From assembly GCF_964204865.1 (NCBI RefSeq), contig NC_135252.1:13640001-13704000 (forward strand): 64,000 nucleotides of DNA. The letters are read 5' to 3'. The position numbers and the translations under genes are program-made. The notes under the pieces are model-generated. The model did no database searches and was not told the origin of the DNA. It saw only the letters and a program-made list of their open reading frames with translations. The DNA is from Styela clava (lineage: Eukaryota). Positions within the stretch are counted from its first letter, which is position 1. Every line of letters begins with the position of its first letter. Below, in pieces: positions 1 through 13,996 of this stretch.

Positions 1-56
1 AACTCTGACTTTAACTGTCTCAAGAAGAGATATCTGATACCATTATCTCATCTTAC

Positions 57-2566
57 CAACTTTTATCTTTTTTCCTATTTTGAAAGCGACAGATACTCTT
101 CTTGTGATCTGCTTTGTCGCCTCAACGTTGCATCTCGACACTGATGCGCTGAGAACTGTGCGTGGTTTTATCACTAGCTGTAGCTTCCTGGCAAAACATT
201 TAGGAGCGCTTGATATCTTTGGAACAAGAGGCCCGGATGGCAGAATTCTAGATGCCCCCGATGAAGATACTCGTATATTGAGCCGTCCACCAGATGCTTG
301 CTTCAATATATCTTTCAGACTTAGTGCTCGCTTTCCTCTTACAGGACTAACTGGTTTGGATTTGGTACTTGTTGGCGCGTTCTTTTTTGCGCATGTTGTT
401 ACATACGTTTTCGATCGATAATATGTAATTCTAAAATAAAATTCAAAAAAACGATTTTAACTAGCTTACATTAGTAGTGTAATATTAATAAGAACTATGT
501 TGGTCTTGGTGTCACAAATATAGATGACGGTTCGCAACGAAAGTTTTGAATCTCATAAATTTAAAAAATGTACGTTTCATTTTGTAGTGAGGTATTCTAC
601 TGTTAACTTTAATAACTCATTGTTAATCTTAGTATGACAGTCTATTTCAAGTATTTTTCAATTAATTTAATATTTAATCTAGTTTTTCTTAACTTATGAC
701 TTGATTTGACCTAATGATATTTTGGATACTGCATAGAATGTGATTAACAATACTCTCAATATTCAAACCTACCTGCAGTTTGATCTATGATTGGTTAAAA
801 ACGCTGAAAGATCGATGAAGTTATATTTGGGAGCGATAACCTCTTCTCCTGGTTTAGATGAAATAGTTCGAGTCATAGACAAAGCGGCTGATGTAAGACA
901 GACAACATATTGAGTCCTTGATATCGGACAAGAGCTCATTGTGGTAAACTTTTGAAAAATTTTAGGTCTGAATACTTCCGTCCCAACTTTTTCACAAGGT
1001 CTCGTAGTGTTGAGTGGATTGGCTGTTAAAATCAAATTATTCTTTATGAACAATGAATAAGTTGAAAAAAATGTTATATGGTTGAATGGTGTCTCCACAG
1101 ATTAACACACATTTCATACAATTTCTTAAACGCCAAACATAAAAATTGAGTTTCTGAGGCGGATGTTTTTGAAACTTGAACATATTTTGCATTTTCACGA
1201 GAATAAAGGTATAGGCTGTAAATTGAAGACGGCTAATTTAGAAAGTTTACTAAATTCAGGTTTATTCTTTTCTTACTCCAGCGGAATATTATAGCCTCTT
1301 TGATGAGTCAATTTCCCATTCCCTCTACCTGACTATGTCACTTTTTGCCACTTAACTTTTTTATTAACACCTAGTTTTTTCTATCGTCTGTTGTTGTTTT
1401 AACATAATTGTGAAGTTCAATGAATTCTTTGTACATTTGGCTAAAACTTATTGTTTATGTTGCGGATTTTCATAAAATGAAATGCTACAAATGAAAATAT
1501 ATTACAGCGAATAAAGAAAACCGATCAGATTCAAAACAAGATGGTCCACAATGACTAGGTCAATTTTGTTTTGATCTACATAAAATCTTTAGTCAAATCA
1601 TTCCAATTTTTGTTAATAGTTTGGTACAAATTCGGTGACATTTTGGTACAATCGCTCGAATCGACTACCTACCTGCATATTCGTTTATGCATTCTTTCAG
1701 TGGAATCAAGTAGCTCGACGTTGGCAAAAGGAAATGATTTGCTTGTTCTATCCAACAAGACTCATCTTTGTCTCTAAATTATCATTACAAAATGTTTTTT
1801 CAGTTTTGCATATTTGAAATTCTGATGAATTTGTGGATTATCCCAACTATCTTTACATTTTCAGTTCAATCTTACTCCGAACTTTGTAGGTACACCAGCA
1901 ACTGGATTTGGCGTAAGAGCTTACGTGATAGAAACGACCATCCTTACACGTTACATTGATGACATCTATGTCACAGCCATGCTTTAATAATTAGTTAAAT
2001 TGAGAAAAACCTCATTATGTACAATATCAATTTTCCACTATCATATTTATCGAATAAATTGGATATTTATAATTTCAAATGCACCAAAAACATTTTAATA
2101 AAATAAACATACTTGCAATAAAATTCGTCAGTTGCTGTAAACCATAAATCATCCCATACCACATAATCTACAATATATTTCCACGACTTTACAGCTCCTA
2201 ATTTTTCTTGCATGCATATCGTGAAAAAAGGTCTGATACTTCCCAAAATTCCCTCTTCTCGACATTTCTGTCTACATCCTGAAATTAGATAGTAAAACCA
2301 AAATAATGTGGAACGTTATATGGAATATTTTTCTTTACATAATCTGCTTCTCATTGAATTCCGCGATGCAGTAGCTGTAAAATCTGTATCTATGATACAC
2401 ATTTGCTTAGGTGATTTTATTGCGAAATTTCATCTGAAATATAATATTTATGCCTACTACGGAATTCAATTAAAAAGATTTTATATATAAATGAAATACC
2501 TTCAACATAGGTGAAAGTTTGGAAAATGAGTATCATCACAATCGTCAAATAAAATATATTCTTCAT
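57..2566 (-). CDS. Uncharacterised secreted Cys-containing protein, paralog 1 (5 exons in window, ~319 aa; probably continues past left edge)
   Basis: Exons 2566-2500, 2278-2113, 1773-1673, 1022-773, 430-57 all have GT/AG ends and matching phases (1,2,1,2,1), giving one open frame: signal-like MKNIFYLTIVMILIFQTFTYVEG, then CRQKCREEGILGSIRPFFTICMQEKLGAVKSWKYIVDYVVWDDLWF...CWIEQANHFLLPTSSYLIPLKECINEY...RGKRALSLKDIL.... Exon-by-exon similarity to the gene at 7625-12054. If the donor at 56 is not used, the frame stops at 43-45. Confidence 0.8.
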
Positions 2567-5500
2567 TTTCTTTTGCTGAACATCCACACATCCGACGAGC
2601 AGTGGTACATCCAAATCTTGAATTACAACTTATAGGTCAATCTTAACAACAGATTTCTCGATTATGTCGTCGAATATATGCATAAAAGATGTAAGAAAGT
2701 TTTTGCCCCCAGGGGTAGCGCTTGTGCTTCGTCATAGGGATTTGGTTTTTGTAAAATGCTTCGGAAAGATATTGAATAACACGATAAATATACTGTAAAA
2801 AATAATACGTTTTCGAGGTAATTCATGTTACAACTTTTTCAAACTACCAAATCAAACAATAAAGGCGACAACAATTTAGCATTGTGCTTTTCTATTTGAC
2901 CAAGAACTATATCGCTTTTCAATTAGCTATTACCCATTGATTGCCCTTACCCAAAAATGCCATTTATACTGCTGTTTAGAACACCATGCCAGAATAAATT
3001 TTTAACTTCTAAATTACTCTCATTATTTTCCATTTGCTAACAAAATGAGTTTCGTTGTCTATTTTTATGTCGATCTGACAAGACGTGATATTTGATACTG
3101 CGATTCGATTGACTCGGACACTCAAAACGTTCGTAAAAAAATGGTTCAATCACCGATATATACGGGTTCAACTTTTTAATTTGTCATAACTTGGTTAAAT
3201 TTATATCATAGATTTGAACCTTGAGTCCGTTTTTTTACTATTCATTTACGTCTAAATTTCCAAGTGACCGGCTGGTTTATTATTGTTATGACTGTCTATA
3301 TCTAGACACTGCACTCCGTAAATTGGTATTTGATGTGGTTTGTTGTGGTAAATTATCGCTGCGGAAGAAATTATTGTTTTCAGATATAACATCGAACACT
3401 TCCTGAAGTATAATTCATAATAATTCATTTACAGACACCGATTATGAGTTGCAAAAAAACACTACTCTCTTCAGTCAAGTGAATATAAGTGTACGGATAT
3501 AATAAAGGAAACTAAGATGCAGTATACTTGTAAAAAAATATATATCAACTATCTTCACATTTCTCAAACTTTCGATGGTGCTGCATTAAACCGCTGTAGG
3601 CCGCTAGAGAAGCGTGGATATAACGCCTGTATATTTAGCAAACTGTCATAACAAAATTCTACTGTCTATCTTGTCTTATATCAAAGCTATTTAAATGTAC
3701 CTGACGAAGTAACTGTTTATCTTTCTTTCAGAGGCTCCCGAAATTATCTTACTTGAATATGTTTCTTTTCGGATTCGATATCAATTGTGTAAAAATTGTT
3801 TATTCGGTTGAGTACGAACAGTTATCACCAACGGCGATCGGGAGTTTATAGAGAATTTTGACCGGGCCATATCAACGGCTCATGAGGCAATCAAGCAACA
3901 TCATCTGTCTTTGGCAGAATTGTATTTGACCATTATTCTTTTATCTTTTCAAAAGTCATATCGTTGCACGCGCGTTTAATTTTATTTTCAAACGTTGTTT
4001 TAAGCTCATTGTGATGAAGTTTTTGATGGAATATTTAGGAACCTCCAGTTCCTGAAGAATCGCACAAGGCATTTCCGTCAACCATTGAAGTTGAAAATAT
4101 CCTTGTGGGATTGTGAAAAAACTGTTGATAACATCACCAAAATTACCCACTTCTAGTCGGCCACTCCGCTGTGTCGTGAAACGATGCGCTTCATTGAGTT
4201 TTCAATTATGATTAAAGTTGATTTGAAACAGCCTTCTTGATATCATGCATTTGAAAAACAACGCTGGTGATTTAAGAATCCATTATCTTTCAAGGGAAGT
4301 ACACTTTGAAAATGTTTTTCTTTATAATTATGTCACATGTCACCATGCCTTGGGGATCATTTGCCACAATGCATTAACCTAGAATAATATCAGTCTTTAT
4401 ATTTTCGACCAAAAACTAGCAAGACTATTCTTTCGTTCTATATTTGTCTTAACAAGTTCATCGCAAATGCCGTTAACGCTAATGTTCTGTAAATTGCTTA
4501 CCTTATCGTAAATCGTACATGTATACAGTTTTTAACCACAAACAATTAAAGGAGTGTGCACAGGAGTAAATAAACAAATATACGACTTCGAGATTACGAG
4601 ATCTTTACAGTTATTAAAAATAATTTAACGATAGCGTACTGTATCATTAACACGGTATTAGTGAACCATATTCTTGACGTGCTTTAGTGGGTGGGGATGT
4701 AAATAGATATTTTCGAAATTTAAATTGTACATGAAAGTTAGAAAAAATGGATTATGAAATTGCATAAAACAGAGAGACCAAAACCTTCCTTCACAGTATT
4801 GAAACAATTTTGTTTTTCATATTTCAATCCAGAATGGAAGTGAAGAACTATTCTGAGTTTGCTATGGTTTATATATTGCAAATATTCATTGCATGCGTAC
4901 ATTTTTATTTATCAATTGTTGTATTTTATTTTCAGTTGCGCCTTTACGGGAAACTTTTTATTTCCAGCTTCAGGAACAAATTTCACAATTGAATGTCTTA
5001 TTGAAAGGCGACAAATTAAGAGATTCAGTGTTCGTTCTTACCGTTTTCTTCAGATTACCATCTTGCAAAATCATCAAAATTAAATAAAACCTGATGCGCT
5101 GCATTCCGCAAGTCCTTTATGAAAATAAAAAATTATTGCTAATGTCAAAGATTGTTGGCTTATATTGCACTTATCAATCAATACTTTCAATTTCATAAAC
5201 ATATGTTATGTATGTTTACATTAATTTTTTCTGTTTGTTTGTGTTTACTTTCTTGTAAGTATGTTTATGTTTCCGCGCCTTTGGGCTGCTTGTTGTAAGT
5301 TGAAATAGAGTTTGAAGTTCATTTGATCAGAGGATACATACAATGAAATTATTTATAAATATGATAGACTGTTTAATTTTCATGAATTTGGAAAATTCGG
5401 TTTCATGGTAACGGTATAATTAACAACAGCAAAAAATGACTGTTTTTTTACCTTCATCATAATGTTTTGTTTTTATTATTCACATATTTGATATCTCAGT

Positions 5501-7624
5501 TTTTATTGAAAATTCATGGAAAAAAAATCTCAAGTTTTATATTATGGGGTCGTTTTTTCATGTACTTTGTCTATTTGTACCAGACGTTTTTCTATATCAT
5601 CAGGTAATATTGTATGTTTTCCAACTGGTTTTCAATATTTTATTTGGAAAGTAAATATTATTTTTACCTTCAGCTTTGTATACAAAACTCTTTATTTGTG
5701 TTTACAAAAGATATCATAAAACGTTAACAATATATTCAAGGGCATTCATGGTGTGTATGCTTTAGATACATTCGTTTTTGTTTTCATTTACTTCGATTCT
5801 CAATTGTAAAACACTTGTTCACGCAAACAATGCGTATATGTAACTCCCTGAAGCGCTGAATTTTTTTTACATATTTATGAAATGTACTCGACAAGGTAAC
5901 AAGGTCTTAACCCCTGGTTCTAGAAAAATAAAACATTGATGAAACATTAAAAGCGATTGTCGTAATTGGAGGGCGTATCCGTAAAATCGACTGTAAACTG
6001 CACACGTCGTTGGTTAACTTGGTTAACTCATCTCAAATATTGATCTCATACTCAAAAACCATTTATAAAAGAAGTTCAAAGAAGCAGTTTGACACACATA
6101 TATATATATATATAGGTTTTTTCAGATCAACGCTCCACTTCATATATCTCAATGCTTATAAAAAAAAAGTCTTCTCTATATTGGCATTTTTACGTAGAAG
6201 CAGATTTTGTTTTGGATATGATTTTTCATTACAATATAGTTGGTTCGAATATCCCTGTAAATAAATGAATCATTAATACGATGAACTTATGAAGTTTCAT
6301 TTAAAGCTGGTATCACAATTTACTCTTAACAGAGATAGCAGAAGGTAAACCGTTTGGTATGTTAAGGTTGACATTTTTGCACGTGCGGAACACATTCTTT
6401 CTGTTTTGTCGTACATGTTGTTAAATTTTAGGTTTATTTACACGTCCATGCCTTCAAGGTGTGTGTCCAAATGTTAACTGATGTTTGTTTAATACAAGCT
6501 ATGCTGAAAAATTTAGATTTTTCATACCAGAAAAAAATTGGATTGCCGATATAAATCCATATTGGAAAAATAATGCAAGTTTTGATCGTATGTTTTAATA
6601 GAACTTTTATAACAAGCCTTCCGGTGAAATTTATTACAGAAAAATGATTTTCACCGCACAAAGTTGAGAGCCCCCGTCCTAAGATATATTGCGTATAGCG
6701 TGTACAAAAACTGCCTTTATCTACATGAAAATGTACAACTGCATTTTAATATTATTATTTTGTGGCGGACAATGTATTTTTTCAATTCAGACCAAGTCAT
6801 TTAAGATGTGATGGCTCAGATTAATTTTCGAGTATATTCTGTATGCAATTTGCATTTTTTTTTCATTATTTTGTCAATATTTTATCATGGAATATGTATG
6901 ATTTGAAGTGGTAGAAAAAGGTCTTCCGCATGTATTGGAAATCTATGATTTCTCTTTCTCAATGTCTGCAGAATTTTTTTCTTACTGGTCTACATTACAC
7001 ATTTAAGCACTATTATAAAATTTTCCATTTGAAAACATTTGTAGAAGACCAATACCTGACCACTGTCTAAACTTGTAAGACAAAACATTAAACACTTAAA
7101 TTGATAATTATCATAAATTGATTTATTAAATTGCATGGTAGAAATAAAGGGCAGCTCTAGATGCCTGTGTCAAATAATGGAAGTGAGAATAAGGAAGAAC
7201 AATAAAACATGAAACTTTGGAATAAATAAAATATTGGAAAATAATAATATATATAGCAATACACGGAACCTTTGAAGATGCCCATTTCCAATCCGGTTTA
7301 TAACGGCACACTTCATTAGGCACTTTAACCGCGGTGTTGGTCATTATTATGTTCGATATTGAATTGTTTATTATCAGAGCATAATATTTATGCTGGCTTA
7401 GTCTTGGACTATAAACAAGAACTTTTCACTGTATTACCAAAACAGTTTTGAACTAAATGCAAATACAGGTAAAAGTTGCAATGTTTTTTGGCGCTAAATA
7501 TACAAAAACGCCGAATCTTCGATTCTTCTCTTTGGCAGTTCCTCTACTGCAGTTTTTACTTCGACAATCGAAGTTCATTCATACTTTTTAGGCTTCAATA
7601 TATTTAATCTTATCATCATCGAAA

Positions 7625-10600
7625 TTACGAAGCACAAGACAATAAAATGCTTCTTAGACGAGAATCGTGTTTTACAAGTTGCAACATTACTGAAGGTATA
7701 CAGGATGATTGTTGTACAGAAGCGGCTTTGCATTTCCGTATTTTGATGTTTCCTTCAGTATCCTGTACAACCAACGACCTGTTGAAATACCATTGATGAT
7801 TATTATTTGAAATCAAATTTAATGAGTGTTTAAAAAAGTTTTATTTTGAAGTTGGTGTTGTAATCAATTTAATTACAATTTCGTAGCACCTATCGCTTTT
7901 ATACTATTGTCATATGGAAACTTTCCAAAGTAGAATCTTTCTCTTCGAGCTCAAAAAATTATCTGTTCTTAAAAATTGTATTCAATAGCCGTATTAAAGC
8001 TACTCATACCGAGCTTTTTATTGTAGATATTCACTTTATTTCCGAAAATAGTTACATGGAGTTGAAATACTCATTTCGACAGTCACTAAGTATTGAATTT
8101 GGTTTATTTTTATAGAGCGAAAAAACACTACTTACTGGCAAGATGAATGATTTTCTTCAAAAAATTTGACAACTGATTCCATATCTTCTTTAGATAGATA
8201 TTTTGCAGAAATAAATAAACTGCTTCTCTTCATTTCTTCAGTACTGACTTTTTCACCAACGCACTGAGTAAACCTTTCCGTCGCTTCTTCGTCACAGAAA
8301 TTGCTGGTTACTACACGTGGCATTACTGTAAAACAACGGTTTAATGTTATTTATTTTTCTTTGAGAAAAGAGACCAGCAAATAGTCTATCAAATACCAGA
8401 TGAAATGTAGTTTTTCATTCCAATCTTATTCTCTGAATTAGAAAACTCGCTTACCACTGTTTTTGCCCGGCTCGAGATTTTTCCGTTCATTTATCAATTG
8501 CAAAATATCTATTAATCCCATTGCTTTTTGGACTCCTGATGAAGTGGATGAAACGGGTAATGATGGAGTGCTTGTTTCATGATAACGGAGGAGGACATGA
8601 AACGGGTCAGCCGTCTCCACTCTCTTTGGTATTGCAGTAGTAGGCCGTGTATTCGTTTTGTGTGTTGGACGCCAAGAAGTGTGTTGGTGTGTTGAATCTT
8701 TTTTACTGTTGTGACTTGCTTCATTCGGTTTTGTATGAGCAAACTTTGGATTCATTGTCGTGGACCGGTAGCTCACTGGCCAAGCCGTACTGACAGGCAT
8801 TGGCGGATTGTTGTGACTTATTTTGGGACTGAAATGCATTGGTGAGTCCGGTCGCGAGTTGGCATCCGCATCGAAGGTTTTCTGGGGAACATGGTAATTA
8901 TTTGACACCAATGTGGGACCATTTACCTTTGGTGTTGGTACGTACATTTTTGGGATCGGTTGTTGATAAAATTGCGGCGAGACTGGTGCGGATACTGGTG
9001 GAATATTCATTGCAAGAGGCGGTGGAGTTTGTGGAACGAGTGATGGTGAACGTGCAGCAGCTGGTGCTGAAACTACAACAGGCGACGGTGAGTGTAAAAC
9101 GGGCAAAGGGGAACGGATATTGTTGTTCATATGCACTTGAGATAATCCAGATCTAGTTTGTTGCTGCATTTTTTGCCTCCACGTGGACATTAGCAAAACC
9201 AGGAAATCCTTGTATGAGATTGCACGTTTCGCTCGCCCAGATCGCACCACTGTAAATAGAACATAACAAATATTTGAATGTATTTTCATAGCATCTCGAT
9301 GATAAAATACTTTGAGATGAATTTGACCGATTTATTTTAATTTACTTGTGTATTTAAAAGGTTCGCTATTGCAGTTATGGCGAATGACCGAAAAAGTCTT
9401 CGTAATCCCATACGTTAGTGCCGCAGAGTCAACGAATGTTTCATTCAATTAGCAGTTATGTCAGAATTCGTATTTTGTTATAACTGACAATTATGGTTTT
9501 CTGTGAGCGAAAACTGGGAATGACAAACCTTGCAAATAGTCAGAGTCATCTTCCAGAATGTAATCGATTGATCGCATTTGTTCATCCGTATACTTTTTGA
9601 TACAATCTTTTAGAAAAAGTCCGTAAATAGATGATGGGTCAATAAGAAAGTCTACTTGACTTTTCCAGCAGTCATATGTGTCCTGTTTTTTACTGAAATT
9701 GAAAATAAATTGAATTTTTACATATTTTGAAAATAACTAATTATAATAACTACGATTGTAACTGGTTGTTTATAGGATGTAGGCCCAGGTATCGTCTTGC
9801 AACATTGTTGTTGTGGTCGAAATATCGCTTTTCTCCCCAACTAATAGGAAGATCGATTTGAATATTCAGTACTTAAAAGTGGAAACACTTGCAATTTAAA
9901 ATACAAAATTGTTTTGCCTAAATAAAAATATTCAAATGTTCAAGTCAAACAACACACTATACGGAATGATTAATATATTATACGCCAAATGTTAAATAAT
10001 TAAATGCGCTTTATCCCACTTACTGAAACACATAATATATATATTCAGTTTTATTTAACGATATTTTAACTTGTCATGAATTTGAATAAATTGTGATTTT
10101 GTTCGATTGGACTATATCCAAATTTGGTCAATAGCGTCAATATTTGACGCTTGTTAATTTTCGAAAACATGTTTCGATATTTTTAATTTTAATAACAATT
10201 TTAAATAAAATTATTTCAATTCTCAATATAATTGAATATAATTACTCCGCTTAATCTTTAGATATCAATGTATCGAACAGCAGCCTACAAACATTTCTCC
10301 ATTCAAAATTGTCCGTTACAAAAGTTTCAACGTCAATTGCCATAAGAATTCGATATAATTTGACCAGTAATTAATCCTCACCAAATAATTATTTAAGATC
10401 GAGCGTAGGAATCAGAAACCACATTCAAAGGTCATGTCATTCTCTCCGTAGATTTTGAAGTGGTTAATTGAAACTAAACGGTCGCTCTCACGAAATACGT
10501 AGGCGCGATTAATATTACCATTGTGATTTAACTGTGACAGATACTTTGATATCGATATTACGATCAAATATATTTCTAATCGACATTGATGAAATTGAAG

Positions 10601-12054
10601 AAAAAAACATAAAAATGAATGTTGCATTTTTTAAATATTATTTCAATTAATTTTCTGGACTTCTACATCTCAGTTTTCGTTGTTTGGGACACACCCTCAC
10701 CTGCAAAATTGATTTCCAGATGAAGGATACCATTCCGTGTCGTAGATTGAAAATCGCACAATTGCCTCCCATCTATACTTTGTTCCTGCCATCGAAGTCA
10801 TGCATTCTGAGAAATATCGAATTAATCGATCTTTGCTTTCGAACATCCTTCTTCGTTTGTGTCCAACATGACATCCTATAATATAAAACACTGGTTACTA
10901 TTTTGTTTAATATCTTGATGACAATAAGTTGCGATAGCTGTTATAAAACTTCCTTTTGGACAAAGTCATGACATTAATAATTTTTTTTTGGCTAAAAAAG
11001 AGCATAATATGCTGTATAATATCTGACATTTGTTGAATTCATATATGTCCATTATATAGAATTAAATTAGACAAGTGCGTACATGCAAGCCATAGTTACT
11101 GTGACAAGACGACTTTGCAAATTATTTTCAATTTTTTATATATAATTTAATTTGTAGTCATAAAATTAACAATACATACCGTGTGATGCTCCGATAAGAT
11201 ATAATAACGTTGAAGTGAATAAAATAAATCTCATATTTGTTGCCGATTTCATATTGACTATGTTGTATTTGCTGGGTATTTATTAATATTAAACTAAAAA
11301 TTGAATAATTATTAAAAGTAAATAAATTAGTGAAATATATTATATACAAATATTTTTATCAAATACCATGAAAATGTGTAACTTGCCTATGTCAGAAACT
11401 AAGAACAATGTGTACGATTTACGATTGAAGCCTGATATCTGAAATAGTTACGCTGTAAACCTGATCGTAACACTCGCTCTTTCCTTAAATAAAATTGCGC
11501 CACGGCACCTCACTGTTTCATTTGATTTCTGACTAGACAAACTCGTTTTTGCTAAATATATATATACAGCGTGGAAAAGCCGCCAACCCTTCTTTGTCAG
11601 GATTCATATTTAGTTAAATATATTTTTTGTTTTCATATATTCCTAAACCAACAGCGCCCTTTTTCTAATTATTTTAAATATTTATTTGATTTAGCCCGAT
11701 TGTAATTTATCAACAACTTTTTTCCATGTATCAGCCTGTCGAAATATAATTGTTTAAAACAAATTGTTTAAACAATGTTGGTAAAAAAAATTCGAAGAAA
11801 TATGAATTTATTCTCGAAATGTCTGATTTGTTTATTTTTTTAAAAATGCGGATCATAAACATCATCGATTGTGGTTAAACAGACTTACGTTTTTTAATTG
11901 AGTGCAAACTTAGAACACTTTAATTAGAAATATACTCATATTGGAAATAGGTTTTATCATAATATGACATTTACGAACAAACCTTTAAATGTCCATTTGC
12001 CTCCACAAATAAATATAAAAACTATGAGTACATGATAAAATAATGAATACGCAT
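7625..12054 (-). CDS. Uncharacterised Cys-containing protein with Pro/Ser/Thr-rich linker, paralog 2 (~516 aa if the signal exon is repaired; 482 aa from the ATG at 10846)
   Basis: Exons 10875-10701, 9692-9529, 9249-8455, 8325-8136, 7778-7625 are in phase and open to TAA at 7625. A putative signal-peptide exon (12054-11983) is 1 nt short of the needed phase. Shares the motifs F..CM....G....W..IV......D..W and CW..Q......P.S.Y...LK.CI..Y, plus RxKR-A[LI]SxKD, with paralog 1. Confidence 0.8.
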
Positions 12055-13996
12055 TTTTCCTTTATTTCCTTTGCGTATACACTTTGGAAAAAGTCTTTGT
12101 AACGTTGAATAACCTCAGCGTTCATGCAACATTCTGACTTGTACACCACTTGAACAATGAAGCTATATTTTTCTTCAACTATCAATTGCGTAAATATGAC
12201 CTGCAATATTTGTCTCATATTTTAATCATTAAGATGTCCAACCACTGTCCGAAAAAGCTTAACTAACCTTTTCAGCGACGAGTCCGTGTAATTTAGGGCA
12301 GTAATTATTTGACAAAAAAAGTTCAAATATTTGAAAAATGGCTTTAGGGCTAAGAACGGTGTGATTATCAATTAAATAGTTTATACAAAAAACAAGTTAC
12401 CTAGAATTTTTTTACCGATGACAATGAATCTTCGTTTCGAAATGAAATTGAAAAAATCGTTTTCAAAATTTGCATGCATGCTTTTTTCTAATGTTTTAAA
12501 GCTGTGCTTTATATAATTTACCACAAATTTTACTTTCAAATATAAATGCTAATTTACTCTTACACCGTGATGACCACGACTTCAAGTAGAACTAAAATTT
12601 TTTTCTTTATATTCTTCTAAACACTAAACTATAAAGTTATACCCAATGTCCAACAGCTTAACTGTACTACAATTCAAAAGTCGGTCAACTTCAGGTAGCA
12701 AAGAAATTTATAAATAATATGAAGCTCTTCAACAATTTACCAATGAACTGGCCCGTAGCAATCAGAACTGCACACGTATGTATTTCACTAGTTAAATAAC
12801 ATGTCTCTGTCACATATCAAATAACTTTTAACCCAATTTCTGCATTATCCTCTATTCCGTGCAAATAACAATGTACTTTTCTATGCAAATCCTGTATAGT
12901 AATGCACGTTTAAAATATTCACTCATTCCTAATGATGATATGACTTAAGATGTTGGCACTATGTAATGTCATTTTGAACTGATTTCTGATTAATAATCAT
13001 ATATTAAATATTTGTTCATTGTAAACTAATTTACACACGGATTAATAAATAATACGATCATGTCTGCACAAGTTTGATCCCTCACAATTCGATACCTTAC
13101 GCACGGTTTCGTGATTGCGTATACGTCAAAACGTAAGGGTTGTTTCCGGAAGAAATTAATGGCGCATCATGCGACGTCAGCTTTTCTTTTAAATTTATTA
13201 TTACATATTTTTAAAATTTGCATATTTTTATTCATACAAGCCTAAGATCAAAAGAAGCACCACTGACCAGAATATCACTAATTAAGATTATTTTGAGATA
13301 AAAGAATATTTTGAATAAAGCCCACATTCCATAAGGCATGAGTATTTGTATTAAGCGTTGATTGGGAATCTTTCATCACTCAGTCGGTTGAAATCAAATA
13401 TAATTCTGTATCACAAATATACAAATATAAATTCATAATTGAATATTTAATAGTAACGTACACTTATGTTCACTATGAGTGCATGGATAACCTTATGTAG
13501 AAAGCGTGGGTTTACTGCTAGTTCTACACGCCCAATTGGATCTAAAATGTAATCCGGCTTACCCAATCAAAATAAAGGAAATAAAATAAAAACAGTTCAG
13601 ATATGAAATTCTTGCATTCAGCTTATGGGTATGTCTGTTCTATCGAATACATCGCAATGGCTGTGCTCTTGTATAGTCTTTAGTGGTTGATTTCACGTAG
13701 GCGTTTATTAAGTTATGTGGTCGTCAACTGACAAATTACTTATTAATCTCCGGGTAGAATCATTCTTAAGGTAGAATAACAATTTAGTTGGTTTTTGTTT
13801 CCAAGAAATTGAAAGGATTAAAAGTTCATCGCTATATGCAGAAGACATAGTTTTTATGTTTCATCGCTAGGTAGTGATATTTATGTATTTACATTTTTTC
13901 AAATAAATACTCTTATCGGATGTCTAAATAATTGCCTCATTCCGAAGTATTATTGATACATTGTATACAATTTTTTTCATTTAGATGACACTGTAT

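What the first reader, a model, noticed from the sequence alone, without database searches (positions are those of the whole stretch)
57..12054. Tandem pair of an unrecognised secreted Cys-domain protein family
Seen: the two minus-strand genes have the same exon phases and aligned motifs. Exon 2: IRPFFTICMQEKLGAVKSWKYIVDYVVWDDLWFTATDEFYC vs LIRYFSECMTSMAGTKYRWEAIVRFSIYDTEWYPSSGNQFC. Exon 3: CWIEQANHFLLPTSSYLIPLKECINEY vs CWKSQVDFLIDPSSIYGLFLKDCIKKY. Identity is low but Cys/Trp positions are fixed. I recognise no named domain. Inference: a fast-evolving, lineage-restricted secreted family (tunic/ECM, gamete or immune role possible). The ORF track hides it because most exons are short.
Basis: partly seen in the sequence, partly recalled or inferred. 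Interest (0 to 1): 0.75.

Follow-up and report, generated by a model that had tools for sequence, protein, structure and literature searches.

The report
Ascidian-only twin four-cysteine head domain
Two neighbouring sea-squirt (Styela clava) genes encode secreted proteins with a duplicated, cysteine-stabilised head domain that was found only in ascidians and is missing from domain and structure databases; the genes are already annotated, but only as 'uncharacterized'.

Summary
All four quoted motifs lie on the minus strand. Both genes have GT-AG introns with matching phases. Spliced contigs from four runs confirm all five gene B introns.

The genome is Styela clava. Gene B is LOC120342784 (516 aa) and gene A is LOC120342798 (420 aa), both 'uncharacterized' in RefSeq. 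Gene A runs past the left edge of the window and ends in a known Mucin2_WxxW domain.

The shared domain is real (A vs B E 4e-12). It has no Pfam or PDB sequence match. An exon-2 profile found 47 proteins among 1.84 billion, always at the N-terminus. All 23 named ones of 30 looked up are ascidian. S. clava has at least 17 loci.

New here:
- The ~230-aa module is an internal duplication of a four-Cys unit (hhalign E 2.6e-8; controls E >= 0.032).
- It sits between phase-1 introns and is fused to TSP1, WxxW, ZP, EGF, CUB and other domains.
- Furin-type sites flank repeat 1 in most members.

'Fast-evolving' is not supported. Function is inferred only.

The parts
2500..2566 (-). Gene A (LOC120342798) exon 1: start codon and hydrophobic leader, ends in phase 1. 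The 5' UTR was not determined.
   Evidence: identical to residues 1-22 of P0049
2113..2278 (-). Gene A exon 2: N-terminal Cys and the first half of repeat 1 (FFTIC...W...W...C). Phase 1 in, phase 2 out.
1673..1773 (-). Gene A exon 3: second half of repeat 1 (CW...C.NEY). Phase 2 in, phase 1 out.
773..1022 (-). Gene A exon 4: first half of repeat 2. Phase 1 in, phase 2 out.
57..430 (-). Gene A exon 5: second half of repeat 2, with an inserted loop that holds RGKR. The donor GT is at 56-55, phase 1. The last exon (Mucin2_WxxW domain) lies 114-443 bases left of window position 1 (L023:7557-7886, minus strand).
11180..11294 (-). Gene B (LOC120342784) exon 1: start codon at 11252 and hydrophobic leader. 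Contigs reach 11294.
10701..10875 (-). Gene B exon 2: GCHVGH, KRRR and the first half of repeat 1.
9529..9692 (-). Gene B exon 3: second half of repeat 1 plus an acidic tail.
8455..9249 (-). Gene B exon 4: a phase 1-1 exon that starts with RAKR. It is a 264-aa Cys-free linker with 34% Pro+Ser+Thr and no tandem repeat.
8136..8325 (-). Gene B exon 5: first half of repeat 2.
7142..7778 (-). Gene B exon 6: second half of repeat 2, stop codon at 7625-7627, then about 480 nt of 3' UTR covered by contigs.

Best explanation
Genes A and B are two old paralogues of an ascidian-restricted family of secreted, modular extracellular proteins. The family is defined by an N-terminal head of about 230 residues. 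The head follows a leader peptide whose last residue is always small (G, A or S), so the mature chain probably begins with Cys, usually Cys-His. Then comes a basic furin-type site, then two tandem copies of a unit of about 80-100 residues with four Cys. The unit pattern is [FY]xxC, a hydrophobic stretch, C, then CWxxR[LF]xxL...SxL...C. The spacing of hydrophobic residues suggests helices held by two disulfides. Each repeat is coded by two exons, and phase-1 introns bound the head on both sides. That makes it a class 1-1 module that can be shuffled, which fits its fusion to TSP1, WxxW, ZP, EGF/LDLR, CUB, sushi, trefoil and Ly6 domains in different members. Gene A is head plus a mucin-type WxxW (CysD) domain. 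Gene B is the head alone, with a Pro/Ser/Thr-rich linker between the two repeats. I infer that both are matrix- or mucus-type glycoproteins cut by proprotein convertases in the secretory pathway: B at KRRR and RAKR, A at RGKR. I infer that the head acts as an assembly or binding domain. Shown here: the gene structures, expression of B, homology, the internal duplication, the taxonomic range among named hits, the partner domains, and conservation of the basic sites. Inferred only: secretion, cleavage, helical fold, disulfide pattern, and the matrix or mucus role.
For: Gene models and splicing. Identity of the genes and species. Homology of A and B: E 4e-12. Family: 47 proteins at E <= 1e-3 among 1.84 billion, each matching at about residues 5-130, and 17 loci in this genome. 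Internal duplication: hhalign of the repeat 1 profile against the repeat 2 profile gives probability 95.2%, E 2.6e-8, score 45.0 over 72 columns. The reversed control scores 8.3 and the best of 30 column shuffles scores 13.1 (E 0.032). A repeat 2 profile built without gene B finds P0009 residues 418-515 at E 1.5e-11. Partner domains among 38 members: TSP_1 in 10, Mucin2_WxxW in 6, ZP in 3, EGF in 3, CUB in 2, plus LDL-receptor class B, sushi and trefoil, and Ly6/uPAR-like in P0018. Residue before the first Cys is small in 38 of 38; Cys-His in 32 of 38; strict RX[KR]R before repeat 1 in 30 of 38 (any dibasic pair in 35 of 38); strict RX[KR]R after repeat 1 in 20 of 37. A's RGKR is kept as RSKR in its 50%-identical orthologue. 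Gene A's WxxW domain: PF13330, E 1.5e-22, 80.5 bits against a cut-off of 22.4.
Against: There is no direct evidence of secretion, cleavage, glycosylation or tissue of expression. Runs X1-X4 are coded and carry no tissue label. Gene A and its orthologue lack the basic site before repeat 1 and carry an extra Cys there. So convertase processing at that position is not universal. The linker of B has only 34% Pro+Ser+Thr and no tandem repeats, so 'mucin-like' is weak. The helical fold is read from residue spacing only. The Atlas's own models of two relatives are poor (pLDDT 0.52 and 0.40).
Confidence: 0.55

Rival explanations
1. Precursors of a released factor. Repeat 1 (about 90-100 aa, four Cys) lies between two convertase sites and would be cut out as a soluble hormone- or cytokine-like ligand. 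The rest of the protein would be a carrier or a second product.
For: Strict RX[KR]R before repeat 1 in 30 of 38 and after it in 20 of 37. Gene B has both (KRRR, RAKR).
Against: The head is fused to structural matrix domains in most members, which is unusual for hormone precursors. Gene A lacks both flanking sites. The RxKR-A[LI]S motif sits at non-equivalent places: in A inside a loop of repeat 2, in B between the repeats. As a local match it is not significant (E 0.11). An odd Cys at the N-terminus could keep the pieces linked after cleavage.
Confidence: 0.15
2. Rapidly diversifying recognition proteins for gamete coat, allorecognition or immunity.
For: Lineage-restricted family with many paralogues in tandem clusters. 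ZP-domain, TSP1, C-type-lectin-named and sushi partners occur. Identity between paralogues is low.
Against: A and B are deep paralogues, each with a closer relative elsewhere. A's head is as conserved as its WxxW domain between orthologues, 54% against 54%. No dN/dS or population data were obtainable. No tissue information.
Confidence: 0.15
3. The repeat is a diverged copy of an already known small disulfide-rich helical fold, for example saposin-like, that sequence methods miss. If so it is not a new domain class.
For: Four Cys in about 80 residues with helix-like hydrophobic spacing. Sequence methods often fail on such small domains.
Against: No Pfam hit in any of 38 members at E <= 0.001 or in 10 members at E <= 0.1. 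No PDB sequence hit to the head. No Atlas look-alike for two relatives. The Cys spacing differs from the saposin pattern as I recall it, which comes from no call.
Confidence: 0.3
4. Annotation or reading artefact: chance ORFs or pseudogenes.
Against: Spliced contigs of 1,228-1,879 nt cover gene B in four runs. All reading frames are intact. There is a 50%-identical orthologue of A on a transcript-sized contig, and 47 relatives.
Confidence: 0.02

Closest known systems
Mucin-2 WxxW / CysD-domain proteins (Pfam PF13330)
   Same: Gene A and 5 other members of the 38 scanned end in one or more WxxW domains. Like these proteins they are secreted-type and Cys-rich.
   Different: The WxxW domain is only the C-terminal partner, and for gene A it lies outside the window. 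The shared head of A and B is unrelated to it. There are no VWD, C8 or TIL domains. Gene B has no WxxW domain.
Furin-cleaved N-terminal propeptides of polymer-forming glycoproteins (von Willebrand factor, gel-forming mucins). This is a works-like comparison from general knowledge; PMC7599080 was seen in a search listing only.
   Same: An N-terminal Cys-rich region follows the leader, is set off by RX[KR]R sites, and precedes matrix or mucus domains.
   Different: No sequence relation. The head here is about 230 aa made of two four-Cys repeats, not D assemblies. Cleavage and any assembly role are untested.
Class 1-1 mobile modules of animal extracellular proteins (exon shuffling; recalled general knowledge, from no call)
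   Same: Phase-1 introns lie after the leader, between the repeats and after repeat 2. The head is combined with many other modules.
   Different: Among named hits this module is confined to ascidians and always takes the N-terminal position.
Oikosins, the lineage-specific house proteins of the appendicularian Oikopleura (PMC3390340; search listing and start of abstract only)
   Same: Tunicate extracellular proteins with little likeness to proteins of other animals.
   Different: No sequence comparison was made. No oikosin appeared among the 23 named hits.

Membership tests
Ascidian twin four-Cys head family (unnamed; defined in this report) | Repeat 1: [FY]FxxC ... W ... W[FY] ... C, then CW ... 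C..[EK]Y, at the N-terminus | tested here: met
   A and B both carry it. Profile hits P0009 at E 3.7e-13 and P0011 at E 4.6e-12, but both genes were in the query profile. A profile built without B gives E 2.3e-24.
Ascidian twin four-Cys head family (unnamed; defined in this report) | Repeat 2, homologous to repeat 1 | tested here: met
   hhalign E 2.6e-8 with controls. B residues 418-515 match at E 1.5e-11 with a profile that excludes B. A was itself in the profile. Its orthologue P0078, which was left out, matches at E 1.2e-7.
Ascidian twin four-Cys head family (unnamed; defined in this report) | Small residue then Cys directly after the hydrophobic leader | tested here: met
   38 of 38, including A (G-C) and B (G-C). 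The signal-peptidase site itself is inferred; no predictor was available.
Ascidian twin four-Cys head family (unnamed; defined in this report) | RX[KR]R between the first Cys and repeat 1 | tested here: inconclusive
   Strict motif in 30 of 38. B has KRRR (dibasic but not the strict motif). A and its orthologue have none.
Mucin2_WxxW (PF13330) | Pfam model above the gathering score | tested here: met
   Gene A protein P0049 residues 333-416, 80.5 bits against 22.4. The exon lies outside the window. Gene B has no hit.
Gel-forming mucins / von Willebrand factor | VWD, C8 and TIL assemblies | tested here: not met
   No such Pfam hit in P0009, P0049 or any other of the 38 members.
Gel-forming mucins / von Willebrand factor | Long Pro/Thr/Ser tandem-repeat domain | tested here: not met
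   B exon 4 has 34% P+S+T and no tandem repeat in 1-12100 beyond four short AT-rich arrays outside the exon.
Proprotein-convertase substrates | Entry into the secretory pathway and an exposed RX[KR]R site | tested here: met
   The motif is present: B RAKR, A RGKR. A's is conserved in its orthologue. Secretion is inferred from the leader.
Proprotein-convertase substrates | Actual cleavage | not testable with these tools
   Needs protein chemistry.
Saposin-like (SapB) domains | Pfam SapB models or a saposin fold | tested here: inconclusive
   No Pfam hit.
Hedgehog/Spitz-type N-terminally lipidated ligands | Mature N-terminal Cys that is acylated, followed by a basic cluster | not testable with these tools
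   Only the sequence arrangement is seen. No Hedgehog-family Pfam hit. Acylation needs an experiment.

The most novel reading that the evidence does not exclude
The head is a new, ascidian-born mobile protein module. It arose by duplication of a two-exon four-Cys unit and spread by phase-1 exon shuffling onto at least eight kinds of matrix domains. Its near-invariant start (signal cleavage, then Cys-His, then a furin site) marks a shared maturation switch. For example, an N-terminal Cys that is lipidated, metal-bound or disulfide-tethered could hold the protein until a convertase releases it. That would be one regulatory device governing a whole set of ascidian extracellular proteins.
Probability: 0.15. 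Interest if true: 0.65.

Novelty: new variant of a known kind. Interest (0 to 1): 0.42.

Why it matters
Tunicates build unusual extracellular structures (tunic, mucus feeding net, egg coats), and many of their matrix proteins have no counterpart elsewhere. This is a family-wide N-terminal module absent from Pfam and from solved structures. It has a clear origin by internal duplication, the exon phases expected of a shuffled module, and a conserved Cys-His plus furin-site start. That gives a concrete handle on how ascidians invented and spread a new extracellular domain. It also offers a simple testable idea about how a set of their matrix proteins matures. At minimum it would justify a new domain family entry and would put a name on dozens of 'uncharacterized' or misleadingly named models (cubilin-like, SCO-spondin-like, properdin-like, fibrillin-1-like).

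Tried and rejected
Pfam on the nine exon translations gave only two chance hits below cut-off: AGA2 at E 0.27 and IRK at E 0.085.

The word-index search with the exon-2 alignment found nothing. With the full-length alignment it was swamped: 8,000 candidates were scored and 3 hit. With gene B it found only gene B itself. These blanks say little because of the length window and the word filter.

Own-genome searches with A4 and A5 alone found no paralogue. Repeat 2 is too diverged for single-sequence search and needed profiles.

The PDB profile search matched only the TSP1 columns of the alignment. The exon-2 profile gave one chance hit at E 1.7.

The Atlas search for P0018 returned only Ly6/uPAR look-alikes of its C-terminal domain. 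For P0027 it returned no usable hit.

Literature:
- No paper holds the LOC or XP identifiers of genes A and B or of the Ciona relative.
- Four topic searches gave nothing relevant.
- The S. clava thyroglobulin-like paper (PMC12992692, passages found by term search only) concerns Tg1-domain proteins, not this family.
- The S. clava endostyle atlases (PMC10980280, PMC9953650; search listing only) may list these genes in supplements. Supplements are closed and I did not open them.

I rejected the idea that the RxKR-A[LI]SxKD[IF]L peptide is a positionally conserved product, because it lies at different places in the two proteins. I rejected a recent tandem duplication.
Full report
WHAT IS IN THE SEQUENCE

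Reading the three minus frames, I built both genes exon by exon.
- Gene A: 2500-2566, 2113-2278, 1673-1773, 773-1022, 57-430.
- Gene B: 11180-11252, 10701-10875, 9529-9692, 8455-9249, 8136-8325, 7625-7778 (stop).
- All introns are GT-AG.
- Intron phases are 1, 2, 1, 2, 1 in A and 1, 2, 1, 1, 2 in B.
- B's extra exon 4 is a symmetric 1-1 exon.

I never joined exons. All searches with my own models were done exon by exon, and the joined step was left out.

EXPRESSION

Four runs (X1-X4, one study, 2020, kind guessed as RNA) hold about a fifth of the sampled words of 1500-11300. That is what gene B's mRNA alone would give.

Their contigs, laid on 6100-12054, are spliced records of 1,228-1,879 nt. 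The joints match my five gene B introns:
- 7778/8136 in 4 of 4 runs
- 8325/8455 in 2 of 4 runs, plus a one-letter variant in a third
- 9249/9529 in 4 of 4 runs
- 9692/10701 in 4 of 4 runs
- 10875/11180 in 3 of 4 runs

All read CT..AC on the plus strand. The transcript covers about 7142-11294. Contigs cannot show ends or expression level.

Gene A was not tested with reads because the only read-laying run was used on B.

IDENTITY OF THE GENES

A profile of exon 2 was built from nine loci of this genome. Run against 1.84 billion representative proteins, it returned 47 hits at E <= 1e-3.

Among the hits:
- P0009 (516 aa) contains my six B exon translations in order. It is XP_039267694.2, 'uncharacterized protein LOC120342784 [Styela clava]'.
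- P0049 (420 aa, XP_039267712.2, LOC120342798) contains my A exons 1-4 whole and the first 124 residues of exon 5.

A's exon 5 therefore ends at window position 57 with a phase-1 donor. The final exon lies 114-443 bases left of the window (L023:7557-7886, minus strand). That exon is a Mucin2_WxxW domain (PF13330, E 1.5e-22).

So the gene models are not new, and gene A is incomplete in the window.

THE SHARED DOMAIN

A and B align at 27% identity over 112 residues, E 4e-12.

Exon 2 occurs at 17 places in the S. clava genome at E <= 0.01 (a lower bound, and nine of them built the profile). Several are in tandem groups: C3 13.131/13.140 Mb, C3 13.627/13.642/13.651 Mb, C17 11.858/11.866 Mb, C8 22.588/22.593 Mb.

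Seven further loci were examined in detail.
- Exon 2 has the same acceptor phase (1) and donor phase (2) in 7 of 7.
- tblastn found a collinear exon 3 in 6 of 7.

The gene just left of the window (P0002, plus strand, convergent with A) is a third member of the local cluster.

In all 47 database hits the match lies at the N-terminus. Of 30 hits looked up, 23 carry names and all 23 are ascidian:
- Styela clava: 5
- Clavelina lepadiformis: 13
- Ciona intestinalis: 3
- Ciona savignyi: 1
- Phallusia mammillata: 1

Seven carry no name, and 17 of the 47 were not looked up.

NO KNOWN FAMILY

- No Pfam model matches the head in the nine exon translations, in ten full proteins at E <= 0.1, or in 38 members at E <= 0.001.
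- A profile of the 38 proteins hits the PDB only through its TSP1 columns.
- The exon-2 profile hits nothing in the PDB.
- The Atlas holds poor models of two relatives. It gave only Ly6-type look-alikes for the C-terminal domain of one and nothing usable for the other.
- No paper in the library names these genes.

NEW ANATOMY

The family alignment shows that the conserved region is about 230 residues, not about 100. Its second half looks like its first half.

I cut the two halves from the alignment and compared them as profiles.
- Real comparison: probability 95.2%, E 2.6e-8, score 45.0 over 72 columns.
- Reversed control: score 8.3.
- Best of 30 column shuffles: score 13.1, E 0.032.

A repeat 2 profile that excludes gene B finds residues 418-515 of P0009 (exons B5-B6) at E 1.5e-11.

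The head is therefore a tandem duplication of a four-Cys unit. Each copy is coded by two exons with phases 1-2 and 2-1. In gene B a 264-residue Cys-free exon separates the two copies. It has 34% Pro+Ser+Thr and no tandem repeat.

Phase-1 introns bound the leader, repeat 1 and repeat 2. From general knowledge of exon shuffling, this is the arrangement expected of a mobile extracellular module.

In line with that, the 38 members scanned carry these partners: TSP1 repeats (10), WxxW (6), ZP (3), EGF (3), CUB (2), LDL-receptor class B, sushi and trefoil. One member has a Ly6-like end.

CONSERVED START AND BASIC SITES

- The residue before the first Cys is G, A or S in 38 of 38. This fits signal-peptidase cleavage right before the Cys; that is an inference, since no predictor was available.
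- Cys-His occurs in 32 of 38.
- A strict RX[KR]R lies between this Cys and repeat 1 in 30 of 38, and some dibasic pair in 35 of 38.
- A strict RX[KR]R follows repeat 1 in 20 of 37.

Gene B has KRRR and RAKR at these two places. Gene A and its orthologue have neither. They carry an extra Cys near the start, and RGKR/RSKR inside a loop of repeat 2.

In A it is conserved in the orthologue.

AGE AND RATE

In a tree of 39 N-terminal regions, A groups with P0078. P0078 is a 419-aa protein on a 1,670-nt contig, 50% identical over the full length, and the support is 99. B groups with the neighbouring gene P0002 at support 92, which is not starred. A and B are not sisters.

Ten of 49 candidate rows were left out of that tree: a near-duplicate of A, and short or anchor-less fragments.

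Between A and its orthologue the identities are:
- repeat 1: 54%
- repeat 2 core: 45%
- inserted loop: 39%
- WxxW domain: 54%

The head is thus no faster than the known domain. 'Fast-evolving' is not supported. Low identity between A and B reflects an old split.

MOST LIKELY FUNCTION

Shown: these are expressed (B), intact, leader-bearing, Cys-rich modular proteins whose partners are matrix and mucus domains.

Inferred: they are secreted glycoproteins of an ascidian extracellular structure. They are cut by proprotein convertases at the conserved basic sites. The twin head acts as an assembly or binding domain, loosely like the furin-cleaved propeptides of von Willebrand factor and mucins (a works-like comparison only; the defining D assemblies are absent).

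Rivals are a released repeat 1 factor, a recognition family, and a diverged known fold. None is excluded.

The boldest reading still open is that the invariant 'signal cleavage, then Cys-His, then furin site' start is a common maturation switch, such as a lipid, metal or disulfide tether released by cleavage.

VERDICT

What is new is the definition of an ascidian-restricted, internally duplicated, shuffled N-terminal module with a conserved processing signature. Interest is moderate. Function remains open.

Noticed in passing
L018:4193-10000 and L023:1-2666 (C3:13626193-13634666, plus strand), just left of the window: A third family member (P0002, 466 aa, head plus WxxW) lies convergent to gene A. 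The 'pair' is therefore a three-gene cluster, and P0002 is gene B's nearest relative in the tree.
   Followed up: partly
window 7247 and 7347-7348: In gene B's 3' UTR the RNA contigs differ from the reference. There is a 9-letter plus 1-letter insertion in X1, X3 and X4, and a 4-letter deletion in X1. These are probably alleles.
   Followed up: no
window 8759, 8881, 9015, 9057: Four single-letter differences from the reference in all four RNA runs, inside gene B's linker exon. They look like polymorphism between the sequenced individuals. I did not check whether they change residues.
   Followed up: no
window 7749-8163, 10464-10679, 10905-11087: Low-depth contigs (depth 2-6) lie inside gene B introns, consistent with a little unspliced RNA or DNA in the libraries.
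   Followed up: no
window 8325/8456: Run X4 shows the exon 4/5 joint shifted by one base with one other letter between. This is more likely a variant at the exon's first base than an alternative acceptor.
   Followed up: no
window 80-421, plus strand: A 113-aa ORF runs antisense to gene A's exon 5. Nothing supports it as a gene. It is probably a by-product of the coding strand's composition.
   Followed up: no
database names of relatives: Family members are named after their C-terminal partners only (cubilin-like, SCO-spondin-like, properdin-like, fibrillin-1-like, mucin-5AC-like, vitellogenin receptor-like). These names hide the shared head.
   Followed up: partly
G000 C17:11858202-11866374 and C8:22587648-22592800: There are further tandem pairs of exon-2-like loci of the family. 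I did not examine them beyond the profile hit.
   Followed up: no
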